Shown: positions 124 through 54,869 of the stretch, piece by piece
Layout: every line of letters begins with the position of its first letter
How positions within the stretch are numbered: the stretch's first letter is position 1
Source: Octopus sinensis
Lineage: Eukaryota
DNA length: 64,000 nucleotides
Direction of reading: 5' to 3'
Assembly: GCF_006345805.1 (NCBI RefSeq)
Contig: NC_043015.1
Location: forward strand, 4,836,001-4,900,000
Notes under the pieces: generated by a model
Told to the model about the DNA's origin: nothing
Seen by the model: only the letters and a program-made list of their open reading frames with translations
Database searches by the model: none
Translations under genes and position numbers: made by a program

Positions 124-2789
124 AAATCCTTAAATCCTTAAAAATGTTTTAGCCCGAAAGCCGCGGCCATGCTGGGGCACCACCGCTGAATGAGCTACAC
201 TAATTTGTGAATCCAACTCTGATACGTGGCACTTGATCAACAAGGGAGTTCGATGCTGCTGCCCGCATCCGCGTCTCCTGTTGAGAGGTAGGCTCATCTG
301 GGACTCCCATCAAGAAGAGATCCAGTTTAGTTTTAAAGAAACCCACACCCACACCATGTAAGTCTCTCAGGCATTTAGGGAGGATGTTAAAGAGCTGTGG
401 TCCTCTGAAACCCAAGCTGTTGCAGTATCTGGACCTGTATTTTGATGGTGATGTTGGAATCCTTGGCACCATGCAGTGGCGCCCCGTTCTGCGGTTGGAG
501 TAACTTTGAATGCCAAAGTTTGGGACAAGACCCTCCAGGATTTTCCAGATGTATATCACCGCATATCTCTCCCGCCTCCGCTCTAGGGAGAAGAGGTTTA
601 ATACCTTCAGTCTTTCCCAGTAGCTGATATTTTGCATTGAGACGATTTTCTTTGTGTAGCTTCTCTGAATTGCTTCGAGTTCTGCTGTTAGTTTTATATT
701 GTGTGGTGACCAAAGTTGGGAGCAGTAGTCCAAGCGGCTTAGGACGAATGTTTTCCATAGGACCATCAGTGTCTCCTTCTCTCTTGTTCTGAAAGTTCGG
801 AGAATTCATCCAACTAGCCGTCTGCATTTTATCACCAGATTAGCAATATGCATTTGGAAAGATGCATCATTGCTCATGTCAATGCTCAGGTCACGCACTG
901 ATTTTGACTCAGGGATTGCAATTCTTCCTGGGCCAGTGTATCCAGTCTTCACGTCATTTACCTTTGTGTGCCAGTAGCACAGGGCCTGGAACTTACCTGC
1001 ATTAAACTGCATGTTGTTGTCCTCAGCCCAACTGTATATTGTGTCCAGCTCATGTTGCAGATGCGCAATATTTTCAGGGTTTTGTATTGCGTGGGAGACT
1101 TTTGTGTCATCTGCATAGCTAGCAAGGGTGGTCATCGTAGCAACTGAAGGCATGTCTGAAAGGGCCACTATGAACATCAATGGCCCCAAGACAGTGCCCT
1201 GTGGGACACCGCTTGTTATTTGCGTTTCCTTGGAGGTGGCTCCATTGCTCACAACTGCCTGTTTTCTGTCTTTTAGGAAGTTGTGCAGCCACTCTCCAAG
1301 TTTCCCGCTTATGCCGAGACCACGCAGTTTGTGACAGATCATACCATGGTCGACTTTATCAAAGGCTTTTGCAAAGTAGAAATATATTACATCCACATTT
1401 GAGCCATTTAGTAGCTGTTTCAACACCCAGTCATAGTGTTGCAGGAGCTGTGTTAGGCAGCCTCTACTTGTTCGAAATCCATGCTGGGTGTCAGACAGCA
1501 AGTCATTTTCTTCAAGGAACATGATTAGTTTCTTACGGACTATTCGTTCCATGACTTTGCTGATGTGTGAGGTCAGAGAGATAGGCCTATAATTTGTAGC
1601 ATCTGCTCTGCTACCTCCCTTATGGTTAGGGCATATTACCCCCTCTTTCAATTTGACTGGGAGCTTACCACTTGCAAGAAAGCTCTGAAAAAGAAGCTGT
1701 AGCGGCTCGTTTGCACGATTTGAGAAGGATCGCTGGGAATCCATCAGGTCCAGCAGCTGAGTTTGTGTCAATCTCATCAATGGCTAGTGTGATATCATCA
1801 TCTTCGATGTTGATGTACTCAATTTTTGTCTCTTTGGCCGCAGGTAAAGTGGCAACGAATTGTTCTGGGTTGTTTACTTACCTGTGTCCTAGAGGTGTAG
1901 TGAACACACTTTGGAACTTTTCGTTCAGTATTTCACTTATCCTCGTGGGATTTCCTGTGAGAGAGCCATCTTTTTGGAAGAGAGGTCCTATTCTCTGGTG
2001 CACTGTGGCTGTCTCTTTGGCAAACTTAAAGAAAGCTTTAGGGCTTGATTTTATATTTTCTATTACCCAAGCTTCTTTATCTGCTCTCTCCTTTTCATGG
2101 GACTGATGTAGACTTTTCTCATTTTCCATTAGCATTCTTTCGAGCCGAGACTTCTCACCACTTTTGATGTGCTTGCTCAGGCGGTTTGCAACCCTTGTCC
2201 GTCGTCTCATAAGAATCCTCCTTTCTCTAGGGATCCTGTTTTTGTTCTTGTGTGTGCTGGCCCTGCACACTGGGACATATTTGTCACATATGGCTTGTAT
2301 TATGGACATGAAGTGTTTGTGTTTCATGTTTATGTCCGGTTTGGAGAGACATTCAGGTCAATCCTGCTTGAGGATCTCTTTCTCAATCAACTTCCAGATG
2401 GCTTTATGAAAGTTTAAGTTGGAGAGATGGTGGGTGATTTGTATAGGCTGTGTGTCTACGGGGGCTTTTGTTCCATACATAGTCAGCTCTATTATGTTGT
2501 GATCCGAGATCATTGTCGGCATCACGTTAACATTATGGATAATATCCATTTTGTTTGTGAAGCAGAGATCCAGCATATTATCTGCCCTTGTTGGTTGCAG
2601 AACTATTTCCTCCATGAAAGAGGCATTTGTGAGATGGAGCAGGGACTCCACCTGTGCCTGCTGATGGTGTGTCATCCCTGGGAGCATCTGCCCCCCAGGC
2701 CATTCCACATTGGGGAGATTAAAGTCACACATGAAAAATACACTGTTGTGTTGTTTCACATACTGAGTTTGAATATGACAGCAGGACCT
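124..2789 (-). mobile_element. 5'-truncated CR1/L2-group LINE (APE endonuclease end + RT + C-terminal domain + short 3' UTR with (TAAGGATT)n tail)
   Basis: Minus-strand ORF pieces carry APE motifs (CDFNLP, PTR..LDL, SDH), RT motifs (NYRPISLTS, QHGFR, FAKAFDKVDH, GVPQGTVLGP, YADD) and the CR1-type C-terminus (YWERLKVLNLFSLERRRERY). Stop at 200-202; tail repeat TAAGGATT x2 at 124-140. Confidence 0.92.
200..2759 (-). pseudogene. Disrupted LINE ORF2 (pieces 2358-2759, 1878-2327, 806-1780, 200-766)
   Basis: Four collinear ORF fragments separated by frameshifts or stops; domain order EN-RT-CTD is preserved. Confidence 0.9.
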
Positions 2790-14552: not shown

Positions 14553-16098
14553 CTTTAAACCACATTTATATTAGTGACACAGTGATATAATTACAAGCTT
14601 AAATCTATTTATTAGAATTATAAGATGAGCATCAGAATAAAAATCGATTAAAATATTTCAATGCGATTTCGTCAGAACTGATATGAAATGCCAACGGAAA
14701 AAAAGAAATATTTTTATTTTTAACATGGAAATAATTGTGCACTAGTCACGAGCCCTCTTGATTCTACGTAAATGTACTAACAGCTAGGGTAAATTAAATT
14801 GCTCCTAAAGAAATCAACATCATAAAATATAATAAAGTTAAAACAAAACCTATTTTGTCATCTCAGTTTTAATGAGTATTCGCTTTGAAAGTGCACTAAA
14901 CACACTCTCGCATTAATTGTCATTACACCCTACTCAATTATTCAGTCAATAAATTTATAGTTTTTATTGCTGTTGACATTTTTTTACTATTATAGATTTA
15001 AAATTATTACTATATTTTTTCTGTTCACCTGTCGCTGCAGTGATAACGATCAATATGAAGGTGTGCATATTGTTATGAAAATGCAGAACTAAATAGTTTG
15101 TTAATTATTAGGTTAAATATCAAATTGTATTATATTCATAAAATTTGCTGAAAATACAACACAAAACAAACAAATATATTTTCATAGAGTACATTTGCAC
15201 TTTCTACCTAACCCAGATATTCATCTACGATACCAAGTTAAATACGACAGCAACGGATCCATAATATATGTGGCTGTGTGTAAGGGTCTCTTGTTGTTAG
15301 TATGCACGTGTGCTATTTGGCAATTTATCAGATTTAAATCGTTGAAATCATAACGATTACGGCAGAGGAACGGTAAACCGTGCTTCACAATGCTTTAATA
15401 TTCATTGCACTTTGCTGTTGAGATATTTCGATCCGTAGATTATCATATCAATATTTTTTTTCGAATTCTGTCATTACTCAACAATCAATATATTTTATGG
15501 TATGTTACCTAAATCAGATGTTGAATGGCAATTATTTACCCAGTTCAAATTTTCCTATTCTATAGATTACAAAGCAAAAAGAAATGAAACAGAAAAAAAA
15601 ACAGAAAAAAACAGAGATTCTCAGGCGACAGTAATCAGATACAGAAAAAATCTCCCCTTAGTTTAAACGCAACTTGCATTATTTTTACTACACATTGTAG
15701 AATGTGTAAAAAAAGTTCTTAGTATGATATTCGTCTGAGAACTATGATACATGAAGAGGAAGTAATGAGATATAACAAAGGAATAATATATGACCAGCAG
15801 GAATATATATATATATCAAAAGGGAGAGGGAGAGGGAGGGACAGAGAGTGAGAGAGACGGACTCTACAAATTCTGTTTGACATTAATCTGTCAAAATGTG
15901 ATGCTAAAATTAATAGGATGATATAAATATGATAACGAACACAAAGAAATTATTTCAAAGCAAGACCAGTTCAATACAGATAGACAATGACGCACACAAC
16001 CATGAAGATATATATATGTGTGTGTGATGTGTGTGTGTCTATGCGTGTGGGGATGTGCATAGTTTTACACATATATGCACACACACATTTTCTCACAT

Positions 16099-53501: not shown

Positions 53502-53723
53502 TATATTCTATTGTGTCTGGGGGGAGTCATTCTCTTTTAGTGCCTTATTATTTAACACACTCACCGGTAAAATTTCCACTTCTTATTTTTATTTTCTAAA
53601 ATTGTCGTTACGTGTTGCTACCTTTTCAATAGAAATAAGAAATATGTGGAAATATTACCGGTGAGTCTGTTAAATAATAAGGCACTAAAAGAGAATAACT
53701 CTCCCCAGACACAACAGAATATG
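53502..53723. mobile_element. Foldback element with about 75-bp arms, probably Penelope-like pLTR-derived
   Basis: 53511-53579 vs reverse complement of 53646-53714: 4 mismatches in 69 bp, extendable outward through ATATTCT. Confidence 0.85.
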
Positions 53724-53782
53724 CTTCAATACACAAACTCATATAAAGAATCTTGCAAACCAAATCCAAAAACGAAATATAT

Positions 53783-54565
53783 ATATATATATTGTATAGA
53801 GGGCATTATTACACATAAATGCCTCACACTAGGAGGGACAAAGTCATTACTACCAAAACTATACTAATCATACCCAAATGCAGTTTTTCAAAGCAAGACT
53901 TTGTCCCTCCTAGTGTGAGGCATTTATGTGTAATAATGCCCTCTATACAATATAGATATAATTAATTTGTTCAAAAGAAAAAAATTATTTTCGAATTCTT
54001 TTCTTTTATGAGGTTTTCACGCTAGCTACCCGATAATTTCTTGTTAAGATCCTTATTAAGAGATTATCCTTATTGTTAAACTTATTCCGAAATACTTTTC
54101 ATTACCCGACATGCAGTTCGTAAAAAGCCCGCCATTTACCGGATATATGATTTATAAACATTCCATGTGCTTGGCCGGAGTGAGCAGTTGTCTGTTCGTC
54201 TTCGCTACGTAAGGTTGGTAGTTTATTTATGATGTGTTCAGAATCAGTTCTGCTGAGGATCATTAGACGTAAGTTGAATGTGAAATCACGGTGATACAGA
54301 ACTAAATTCATTTTTTAAATGTCTTGCTTTGAAAAACTGCATTTGGGTATGATTAGTATAATTTTGGTAGTAATGACTTTGTCCCTCCTAGTGTGAGGCA
54401 TTTATGTGTAATAATGCCCTCTATACAATATAGATATAATTAATTTGTTCAAAAGAAAAAAATTATTTTCGAATTCTTTTCTTTTATGAGGTTTTCACGC
54501 TAGCTACCCGATAATTTCTTGTTAAGATCCCTTATTAAGAGATTATCCTTAATTGTTAAACTTAT
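53783..54565 (+). mobile_element. ORF-less hammerhead-containing element: inverted segment plus about 1.4 tandem copies of a 478-bp unit, between (TA)n runs
   Basis: Direct repeat 53897-54085 = 54375-54565 (two 1-bp indels); 53783-53899 is the reverse complement of 54321-54438; hammerhead at 54246-54303. Confidence 0.8.
54246..54303 (+). ncRNA. Type I hammerhead ribozyme with canonical CUGAGGA/GAAA core and near-palindromic stem III
   Basis: AGTTCTG (stem I)-CTGAGGA-TCATTAGAC GTAA GTTGAATGT (stem II)-GAAA-TCAC G GTGA-T-A-CAGAACT (stem I'). Predicted cleavage after A54296. Confidence 0.8.
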
Positions 54566-54869
54566 ATATATATATATATATGACCAAAGCTAAAAGGCAT
54601 ACAAATGAAACAAGTGAGTTATGAAGTAAAAAGGACACAAATATGCGAATAATATGCATACAATGCATGAAATTAAACCAAGGATTGTTCACATCATTTA
54701 TAAATAAAAGAATGAAAGTAAATTCAAGGATTTGAAAGACAAGACTATGAAACAGAATAAAAATATATGAGACCTAACAGAAAATACATATTAACTATAT
54801 TGATTTTATGACAGTTGTATTCATTAAGCTACGAAAATATACAAACGTCGTGCATTCAATGCTGCAACC

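What the first reader, a model, noticed from the sequence alone, without database searches (positions are those of the whole stretch)
54246..54303. Near-intact type I hammerhead ribozyme with a dimer-type stem III
Seen: 7-bp perfect stem I (AGTTCTG/CAGAACT), core CTGAGGA (54253-59), stem II CATT/AATG plus GAC/GTT capped by a GTAA (GNRA) loop, GAAA (54282-85), stem III ATCAC-G-GTGAT and an AUA cleavage triplet ending at A54296. Established: Penelope-like elements (PLEs) and metazoan retrozymes carry minimal type I hammerheads whose palindromic stem III favours cleavage as a dimer. Inference: this is such a ribozyme. Caveat: the 10.1-11.1 closing pair is U-U instead of G-C, so activity may be reduced.
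Basis: partly seen in the sequence, partly recalled or inferred. Interest (0 to 1): 0.88.

Follow-up and report, generated by a model that had tools for sequence, protein, structure and literature searches.

The report
Hammerhead ribozyme in an octopus-type retrozyme
The motif is a complete type I hammerhead ribozyme sequence on the RNA-sense strand of a young, roughly 900-copy, 478-bp tandem retroelement that inserts like a Penelope-like element, so it is a new example of a known kind (an animal "retrozyme"), and self-cleavage has not been tested.

Summary
All invariant hammerhead nucleotides are in the right order: CUGANGA, GAA, A15.1-U16.1 and H17. A 7-bp stem I, an 8-pair stem II with a GUAA loop, and a 4-bp/3-nt-loop stem III surround them. 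A strict descriptor finds only this site in the window and nothing in 300 shuffles.

Rfam models do not detect it, and the isolated monomer is not predicted to fold into stem III.

The motif belongs to a 478-bp, 33% GC, ORF-less unit. At least 776-903 near-identical ribozyme copies lie in a 2.7-Gb genome, probably an octopod. Insertions consist of two head-to-head arms of 0.1-4.4 tandem units, with variable 5' ends. There are only two alternative 3' ends, and both abut (TA)n. This is Penelope-like-element (PLE) architecture, and the genome's autonomous PLEs also end at (TA)n.

The U-U at 10.1/11.1 is the family consensus, not decay, and has a precedent in axolotl retrozymes. The only common polymorphism in the whole unit is N7, the one free core position.

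No diverged relatives could be reached, so covariation is untested. Verdict: a new member of the non-LTR retrozyme kind; activity plausible but unproven.

The parts
54246..54303 (+). Complete type I hammerhead motif (58 nt). It occupies positions 350-407 of the 478-bp unit.
   Evidence: Sequence read. Only strict-descriptor hit in the window, 0 hits in 300 shuffles. 776 genomic copies within 3 mismatches, reversed-pattern control 0.
54246..54252 (+). Stem I, 5' strand (positions 2.7-2.1), AGTTCTG.
   Evidence: Pairs perfectly with 54297-54303. Formed in the MFE fold.
54253..54259 (+). Core C3 U4 G5 A6 N7 G8 A9 (CTGAGGA). N7 is G54257.
   Evidence: 54257 is the only common polymorphism of the whole unit. 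Among 21 insertions, 8 carry G, 8 carry C and 5 carry T.
54260..54281 (+). Stem II: U10.1 opposite U11.1, CATT/AATG, an A.G mismatch, GAC/GTT, and a GTAA loop at 54269-72.
   Evidence: Formed in all predicted folds. U-U is the family consensus.
54282..54285 (+). G12 A13 A14 A15.1 (GAAA).
54285..54295 (+). Stem III, ATCA(CGG)TGAT. A15.1 is 54285 and U16.1 is 54295. It is near-palindromic.
   Evidence: Weak as a monomer: -1.3 kcal/mol contribution and about 2% pair probability. It pairs between two copies in the predicted fold of a dimeric transcript.
54296..54297 (+). Predicted cleavage site, between A17 (54296) and C1.1 (54297).
   Evidence: Follows from standard hammerhead numbering. Not tested.
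54297..54303 (+). Stem I, 3' strand, CAGAACT.
54241..54244 (+). Possible extension of stem I. GAAT would pair with ATTC 54306-54309 across a C/AA internal loop.
   Evidence: Seen in the predicted fold of the dimeric transcript. Inference only.
53897..54565 (+). Plus arm of the insertion: 1.4 tandem units (unit 1-478 followed by 1-189). The 3' end is ...GTTAAACTTA.
   Evidence: Direct repeat with 478 spacing. The same ends recur in other insertions.
53782..53902 (-). Minus arm: an inverted, 5'-truncated copy (unit 421-478 plus 1-64). Its 3' end points left into (TA)n.
   Evidence: Inverted repeat I1, 95% complementary to 54318-54449. Head-to-head arms in 17 of 21 insertions.
53777..53792 (.). 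Left (TA)n flank.
54566..54581 (.). Right (TA)n flank.
53503..53776 (.). Neighbouring two-armed insertion of a PLE 3' end, in the same (TA)n tract. Context only, not part of the ribozyme element.
   Evidence: Inverted repeat I2. 79-85% identity to L078 536-750, which lies downstream of a GIY-YIG hit.

Best explanation
The motif is the hammerhead ribozyme of a non-autonomous retroelement of the animal 'non-LTR retrozyme' kind, which depends on a Penelope-like element.

Shown:
- The unit is 478 bp, AT-rich and without an ORF.
- It occurs in arrays of up to 8 units.
- Each insertion has two head-to-head arms with variable 5' ends.
- There are only two alternative 3' ends, each joined to a (TA)n microsatellite.
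- The ribozyme lies on the strand that this polarity identifies as the RNA-sense strand.

Inferred mechanism:
1. Arrays are transcribed.
2. Hammerheads in successive units cut after A17. They act alone or, because helix III is weak, by pairing two copies into a double hammerhead.
3. This releases 478-nt RNAs with 5'-OH and 2',3'-cyclic phosphate ends.
4. A tRNA ligase can circularise these RNAs.
5. A PLE reverse transcriptase/GIY-YIG endonuclease nicks a (TA)n tract.
6. DNA synthesis is primed by annealing TA ends to one of two UAUA-like sites of the RNA.
7. The enzyme copies round a circular or multimeric template, which gives more than one unit per arm.
8. It does so from both sides of the break, which gives the inverted arms.

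The window copy is one such insertion with a single ribozyme. It is a product of the cycle, not a source of unit-length RNA.
For: Motif and significance.

Family:
- 44 of 44 scored genomic matches to 54200-54340 are 96-100% identical.
- 201 exact 34-mers, 776 58-mers within 3 mismatches, and 903 35-mers within 3 (controls 0).
- Arrays with 478-481 spacing reach 8 units.

Architecture (21 independent insertions):
- Inner ends are scattered over the unit.
- Outer ends fall only at unit ~58-64 or 189.
- (TA)n lies on both sides.

Same template for a whole insertion: all units and both arms of an insertion share the N7 allele.

The single common polymorphism in 478 positions is N7, with three alleles. 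The other 57 ribozyme positions have a minor-allele fraction of 0.45%, against 0.85% for the rest of the unit.

PLE link:
- At least 4846 first-look GIY-YIG candidates, with ORFs up to 883 aa encoding RT plus C-terminal EN.
- Their 3' ends also abut (TA)n, at two alternative termini.
- A two-armed PLE 3'-end insertion sits in the same (TA)n tract in the window.

The unit RNA is predicted to be highly self-paired: -126.7 kcal/mol as a circle, against -95.9 +/- 5.8 for shuffles.

Literature:
- Animal type I hammerheads lie in 150-450-bp low-GC tandem repeats expressed as circRNAs.
- The U-U variant is active, and more so as a dimer (PMC7229834).
- PLE insertions are tandem/inverted with microsatellite bias (PMC8557442).
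- Retrozymes derive from PLE pLTRs (10.64898/2026.07.22.740005).
Against: - No Rfam hammerhead model matches.
- Monomer thermodynamics does not favour stem III, and the fold is no better than shuffles.
- The dimer advantage is not distinctive.
- There is no covariation evidence. All reachable copies are nearly identical, and a search for same-architecture relatives with a different first stem II pair found only one non-complementary hit.
- G10.1-C11.1, nearly universal in hammerheads, is replaced by U-U.
- Neither the 3' termini (unit 64, unit 189) nor the recurrent 5' terminus (unit 1, 79 nt downstream of the cut site) coincides with the predicted cleavage site. The DNA copies therefore carry no direct trace of ribozyme processing.
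- There is no sequence similarity between the unit and 30 sampled PLE loci, so the partner is unidentified.
- No transcript data are available.
Confidence: 0.7

Rival explanations
1. The motif descends from a hammerhead but is now a passenger. The element spreads through PLE machinery from unprocessed transcripts, and the ribozyme is weak or dead because of U-U at 10.1/11.1 and a marginal helix III. It plays no part in the cycle.
For: - The termini of DNA copies do not coincide with the cut site, and the common full-length form (unit 1-478 plus 1-189) spans an uncut ribozyme.
- The monomer fold lacks stem III.
- No Rfam match.
- PLE clades without canonical hammerheads proliferate well (PMC8557442).
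Against: - All 11 invariant core positions plus the A15.1-U16.1 pair and H17 are intact in the consensus of a family with at least three active lineages.
- Those lineages differ only at the free N7 position.
- A U-U hammerhead of the same kind cleaves in axolotl.
- Multi-unit arms fit a circular or multimeric template.
Confidence: 0.2
2. The resemblance is chance. A repeat unit happens to contain CTGANGA and GAAA with complementary flanks, and multiplication of the repeat made it look significant.
For: - All copies go back to one recent ancestor, so copy number adds no independent support.
- No covariation.
- Folding energy is ordinary.
- A 2.7-Gb genome offers many chances.
Against: - 0 strict-descriptor hits in 300 shuffles of 64 kb on both strands.
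- The motif lies on the RNA-sense strand of a repeat class already known to carry type I hammerheads.
- The one polymorphic site of the unit is the one unconstrained core nucleotide.
Confidence: 0.07
3. The element is a DNA-level structure: a foldback or MITE-like transposon with a TA target, or a dispersed satellite. It would not be a retroelement, and the hammerhead would be irrelevant to its spread.
For: Inverted arms made of tandem subrepeats, and TA-rich flanks on both sides.
Against: - Arms are asymmetric, with random inner truncation points and fixed outer ends.
- Single-arm insertions exist (L007, L012, L022, L026).
- Outer ends fall at internal UAUA-like sites of the unit.
- Autonomous RT+EN elements of the genome show the same (TA)n-abutting ends.
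- There are no terminal inverted repeats distinct from the unit itself.
Confidence: 0.03

Closest known systems
Metazoan non-LTR retrozymes (Cervera & de la Pena 2020, PMC7229834), especially axolotl HHR_Amex2 in the Rtz_353 repeat
   Same: - Type I hammerhead inside an AT-rich, ORF-less tandem repeat, from dimers to multimers.
- Co-exists with PLEs.
- U-U mismatch at the base of helix II, as in HHR_Amex2.
- The unit RNA is predicted to be highly self-paired.
   Different: - The unit is 478 bp, against 170-400 bp.
- Helices are longer: 7-bp stem I, 8-pair stem II, 4-5-bp stem III.
- No Rfam match.
- The host is probably a cephalopod.
- Here the head-to-head arms, the two fixed 3' ends and the (TA)n target are explicit.
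- circRNA and cleavage are not shown here.
Minimal type I hammerheads of Penelope-like elements (Cervera & de la Pena 2014, cited in PMC7229834 and PMC8557442)
   Same: Type I topology. Association with PLE-style tandem/inverted insertions. Possible action as a dimer through helix III.
   Different: PLE minimal ribozymes have a 1-2-bp helix III with a palindromic loop and short helices I and II. The genome's own examples score up to 48 bits with RF00163. This motif has long helices and no ORF next to it.
pDo500 satellite hammerhead of Dolichopoda cave crickets (PMC2837043)
   Same: - A repeat unit of about 463-505 bp with one type I hammerhead.
- Single and double-hammerhead cleavage were both proposed.
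- Non-canonical pairs are tolerated in the stems.
   Different: pDo500 is conserved across 12 species with compensatory changes, including at 10.1/11.1. It is arranged as a satellite. Here the copies are dispersed, PLE-type insertions, and no cross-species data exist.
PLE insertion architecture with microsatellite bias (Craig et al. 2021, PMC8557442)
   Same: 5' truncation, partial tandems, an adjacent inverted 5'-truncated copy, and insertion into (TA)n.
   Different: No RT/EN ORF in the element. In that paper (TA)n bias is reported for Naiads, which have an N-terminal EN. The intact PLEs sampled here have a C-terminal EN.

Membership tests
Hammerhead ribozyme, type I | Invariant core C3 U4 G5 A6 N7 G8 A9 and G12 A13 A14, in the order stem I - core - stem II - GAA - stem III - H17 - stem I. 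| tested here: met
   Also true of the family consensus.
Hammerhead ribozyme, type I | A15.1-U16.1 pair, and a non-G at position 17. | tested here: met
   A54285-T54295 and A54296.
Hammerhead ribozyme, type I | Three helices able to form around the core. | tested here: inconclusive
   Complementarity is present for all three. Stems I and II are predicted. Stem III is only about 2% populated in the monomer. It does form between copies in a dimeric transcript, but that gain is not unusual against shuffles.
Hammerhead ribozyme, type I | G10.1-C11.1 closing pair of helix II. This is near-universal, not absolute. | tested here: not met
   U54260 opposite U54281, fixed in the family. Precedent: axolotl HHR_Amex2.
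Hammerhead ribozyme, type I | Match to the curated covariance models (Rfam RF00163 and relatives). | tested here: not met
   No hit at gathering score or at E<=10. The same model finds 52 other sites in this genome.
Hammerhead ribozyme, type I | Covariation of the stems among relatives. | tested here: inconclusive
   Copies are 96-100% identical. No diverged relatives were found in held loci, in the genome by pattern or in metagenomes. A custom model cannot be run on this genome.
Hammerhead ribozyme, type I | Site-specific self-cleavage giving 2',3'-cyclic phosphate and 5'-OH ends. | not testable with these tools
   Needs in vitro transcription.
Metazoan non-LTR retrozyme | Short (150-450 bp), low-GC tandem repeats, each with a type I hammerhead, and no LTR/PBS/PPT or ORF. 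| tested here: met
   Unit of 478 bp, slightly above the published range, with 33.5% GC. Arrays of 2-8 units. The longest ORF is 69 aa with no homologue.
Metazoan non-LTR retrozyme | Co-occurrence with autonomous PLEs. | tested here: met
Metazoan non-LTR retrozyme | Expression as unit-length linear and circular RNA. | not testable with these tools
   No transcript data are reachable.
Penelope-like element (autonomous) | An ORF with reverse transcriptase and GIY-YIG endonuclease. | tested here: not met
   No ORF in the element. No similarity to 30 PLE loci.
Penelope-like element (insertion style) | 5' truncation, partial tandem (pseudo-LTR), an adjacent inverted truncated copy, and microsatellite target. 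| tested here: met
   (21 insertions), and for the genome's own PLEs.
Minimal PLE-type hammerhead | Helix III of 1-2 bp closed by a palindromic loop, with short helices I and II. | tested here: not met
   Stem III is 4-5 bp, stem I 7 bp and stem II 8 pairs. Contrast.

The most novel reading that the evidence does not exclude
This family may be a clean natural record of how retrozymes are copied. A circular, ribozyme-processed 478-nt RNA would be reverse-transcribed rolling-circle fashion from both ends of a break in a (TA)n tract. Priming would occur at two internal UAUA-like sites.

The ribozyme would be a previously uncatalogued hammerhead architecture that works only as a double hammerhead. 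Its features are a U-U at 10.1/11.1, long helices, an extended near-palindromic helix III, and invisibility to Rfam.

The three-allele polymorphism confined to N7 would then reflect tuning of the cleavage rate among competing lineages.
Probability: 0.25. Interest if true: 0.55.

Novelty: new member of a known kind. Interest (0 to 1): 0.4.

Why it matters
It adds a probably cephalopod family to the animal retrozymes, with a hammerhead that the standard covariance models miss. Surveys based on those models therefore undercount such ribozymes.

The family is very young, and its insertions are unusually legible. They show two arms, two fixed 3' ends, a (TA)n target, and one template per insertion. 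That makes it a convenient system for testing two open points about PLE-dependent retrotransposition: whether the template is circular, and what the hammerhead contributes.

It does not change the current picture of what such elements are.

Tried and rejected
- Rfam scan of the window, and a relaxed scan of the locus: nothing.
- Own covariance model R1. It found only the window site among 253 kb of held sequence and cannot be run on this genome.
- BLAST of the unit against 30 GIY-YIG loci and 30 RF00163 loci: no similarity.
- Descriptor scan of the PLE loci: no convincing sense-strand hammerhead.
- Pattern search for same-architecture relatives with a different first stem II pair: one hit without complementarity, taken as chance.
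- Pattern search for copies with a paired 10.1/11.1: one mutated copy, C opposite U.
- Metagenome scan for the architecture: 0.
- Look-ups with the 69-aa antisense ORF, to reach other assemblies: nothing.
- Thermodynamic argument for a 'dimer type': rejected as evidence, because shuffles dimerise nearly as well.
- CpG decay as the explanation of the N7 polymorphism: rejected. By my count in the sequence, about 18 other CpGs in the unit show no such variation, and C-to-G is not deamination.
- Position 59 'polymorphism': it is only the junction with (TA)n.
- MITE/foldback reading: rejected on arm asymmetry and single-arm insertions.

Full report
**The observation**

- Stem I is AGTTCTG, pairing with CAGAACT at 54297-54303.
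- The core is CTGAGGA.
- T54260 lies opposite T54281 (positions 10.1 and 11.1).
- Stem II is CATT-A-GAC, a GTAA loop, then GTT-G-AATG.
- GAAA follows, and then stem III, ATCAC-G-GTGAT.
- A54296 is position 17.

In hammerhead numbering every invariant position is met: C3 U4 G5 A6 N7 G8 A9, G12 A13 A14, the A15.1-U16.1 pair, and a non-G at position 17. The topology is type I, open at stem I. The only correction concerns stem III. A monomer hairpin can close only 4 pairs (ATCA/TGAT) around a CGG loop.

**Is it more than chance?**

I wrote a descriptor requiring the following:
- both core strings
- the 15.1-16.1 pair
- H17
- stem I of at least 5 bp
- stem II of at least 4 bp, with a mismatch at its base allowed
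- stem III of at least 4 bp

It hits only this site on either strand of the 64-kb window. It hit nothing in 300 dinucleotide-preserving shuffles.

Against this, no Rfam family matches at gathering score over the window, or at E<=10 on 54150-54400. The monomer's minimum-energy fold keeps stems I and II but replaces stem III with a competing pairing. The hammerhead fold scores -9.1 kcal/mol, against an MFE of -11.5. Stem III pair probability is about 2%. The energy is ordinary compared with shuffles.

**What the window is**

There are no long ORFs around the site, and GC is about 33%. The window is contig C19:4836001-4900000 of a 2.72-Gb, 13,516-contig assembly. A LINE-type RT ORF at 806-1780 (-) has Octopus and Argonauta as its best named relatives. 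The host is therefore probably an octopod cephalopod. This rests only on those names.

**The repeat family**

The motif belongs to a repeat. A 141-nt probe found 44 scored places, and the full-length matches were 99-100% identical. Forty-seven distinct ribozyme copies in the fetched loci are 96-100% identical. Genome-wide counts are as follows.

| Probe | Copies | Reversed-pattern control |
|---|---|---|
| Exact 34-mer across the 5' half, N7 free | 201 | 0 |
| Full 58-mer, up to 3 mismatches | 776 | 0 |
| 35-mer, up to 3 mismatches | 903 | 0 |

The unit is 478 bp with 33.5% GC. Its longest ORF is 69 aa and has no homologue. Arrays with 478-481-bp spacing reach at least 8 units.

**Anatomy of the insertions**

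Mapping the unit onto 21 independent insertions shows one plan.
- Two arms lie head to head in 17 insertions. Four insertions have a single arm.
- Each arm holds 0.1 to 4.4 tandem units.
- The inner (5') ends are scattered over the unit. Five arms start exactly at unit position 1.
- The outer (3') ends fall at only two places: about unit 58-64 (...TACAATATA) or unit 189 (...GTTAAACTTA).
- Both outer ends are joined to (TA)n.

The window copy follows this plan. It has a minus arm at 53782-53902 (unit 421-478 plus 1-64), a plus arm at 53897-54565 (unit 1-478 plus 1-189), and (TA)n at 53777-53792 and 54566-54581.

The polarity of truncation defines the RNA-sense strand, and the hammerhead lies on that strand. 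All units and both arms of an insertion carry the same N7 allele. One template species therefore made each insertion.

This is the insertion style described for Penelope-like elements: 5' truncation, partial tandems, an adjacent inverted truncated copy, and microsatellite bias (PMC8557442).

**Link to PLEs in this genome**

A GIY-YIG search gave at least 4846 first-look candidates, with open frames up to 883 aa. L068 encodes RT followed by a C-terminal GIY-YIG domain.

In most of the 30 sampled loci the element ends at (TA)n. Again there are two alternative termini...TTTTTTACAAA and ...ATTATAAA.

In the window itself, 53503-53776 is a two-armed insertion flanked by (TA)n. It is 79-85% identical to the region downstream of the endonuclease in L078. 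A PLE 3' end and the ribozyme element therefore sit side by side in one (TA)n tract.

I found no sequence similarity between the unit and the sampled PLE loci. The partner is therefore not identified. Further genome sequence could not be fetched.

**Is the ribozyme constrained?**

The copies are too alike for covariation. One informative signal exists. Across 478 positions and about 46-61 copies per position, the only real common polymorphism is 54257, which is N7, the single unconstrained core nucleotide.
- It has three alleles among the 21 insertions: G in 8, C in 8 and T in 5.
- In the first 100 genome-wide rows the split is about C 68, T 22, G 10 and A 0.
- The apparent polymorphism at unit 59 is only the junction with (TA)n.
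- The other 57 ribozyme positions have a minor-allele fraction of 0.45%, against 0.85% for the rest of the unit.
- CpG decay does not explain it. By my count in the sequence, about 18 other CpGs in the unit are not polymorphic, and C-to-G is not deamination.

I take this as modest support. At least three propagating lineages exist, and they differ only where a hammerhead can differ freely.

**The U-U pair**

The U-U at 10.1/11.1 is not damage to this copy. Only one otherwise exact copy in the genome has a non-U at 10.1, and that copy has C opposite U. The axolotl retrozyme ribozyme HHR_Amex2 also has a U-U at the base of helix II. It cleaves 22% in an hour as a monomer and much better as a dimer (PMC7229834).

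**Dimer question**

In a predicted fold of a two-unit transcript the two helix III segments pair with each other, giving 10 bp with a G.G mismatch. Both stem IIs form. Two 58-mers cofold at -32.3 kcal/mol, against twice -11.5 for the monomers.

However, 71 of 300 shuffles gain as much on dimerising. Any hairpin with a tiny loop is near-palindromic. Dimer action is therefore plausible, because the monomer helix III is marginal, but it is not shown.

**Comparison with known ribozymes in the same genome**

RF00163 finds 52 sites, 8 of them over the cut-off. These are the minimal PLE type: GTAC-CTGAAGA-GACCC..GGGTC-GAAAC-ATGT-GTC. The motif studied here is a different design, with long helices.

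**Mechanism**

The shown facts are the motif, the family, the architecture, the (TA)n target, the single template per insertion and the co-resident PLEs.

The rest of the cycle is inferred, by analogy with animal retrozymes and from PLE biology:
1. Arrays are transcribed.
2. The hammerhead cuts after A17.
3. The released RNA is circularised by a tRNA ligase.
4. Reverse transcription is (TA)n-primed at two UAUA-like sites of a circular or multimeric RNA.
5. Priming occurs from both sides of the break.

Neither DNA terminus coincides with the predicted cut site. The recurrent 5' end is 79 nt downstream of it. The copies therefore give no direct trace of processing, and a passenger role for the ribozyme cannot be excluded.

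The window copy has one ribozyme and could not release a unit-length RNA by itself.

**Verdict**

This is a genuine hammerhead-format motif in a PLE-dependent, retrozyme-type repeat. It is a new member of a known kind. Its atypical details are of moderate interest: it is missed by Rfam, it has a fixed U-U pair, its unit is 478 bp, and its insertion anatomy is unusually clear. Catalysis, circular RNA and stem covariation remain to be tested.

Noticed in passing
window 53503-53776: Two inverted arms (53503-53601 and 53624-53722) flanked by (TA)n on both sides. They are 79-85% identical to the region downstream of a GIY-YIG endonuclease in L078. This is a twin-arm insertion of a PLE 3' end, sharing the (TA)n tract with the ribozyme element.
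   Followed up: partly
L068 2355-2400 (also L067, L077): An intact RT+EN PLE family carries a minimal-hammerhead-like motif just before its (TA)n-abutting 3' end: TTGATAA-GGTTC..GAACC-GAAAC-ATGT. Positions 3 and 8 read U and A instead of C and G, which could still pair. There are at least 500 genomic copies within 2 mismatches. Position 8 is A in 98 of the first 100 and G in 2. Position 3 could not be read genome-wide.
   Followed up: partly
window 53897 (equivalent to 54375/6): Five of about 38 arms in 21 insertions start exactly at this unit position, 79 nt 3' of the predicted cleavage site. A TATAAT lies at 54357-54362. This may be a transcript 5' end, but it is unexplained.
   Followed up: no
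window 14642-14679 (-): The loose hammerhead descriptor also hits CAGTT-CTGACGA-AATCGCATT-GAAA here, with very short stems. It shares the 8-mer CAGTTCTG with the main motif. Probably chance.
   Followed up: partly
window 806-1780 (-): A 324-aa ORF with an RVT_1 domain, of LINE/jockey type. Its best named relatives are from Octopus and Argonauta. This is the only clue to the host.
   Followed up: partly
L036/L037 (G000:C16:25146363-25146839): Two canonical minimal RF00163 hammerheads lie 431 bp apart on one strand. This is another tandem hammerhead repeat in the genome.
   Followed up: no
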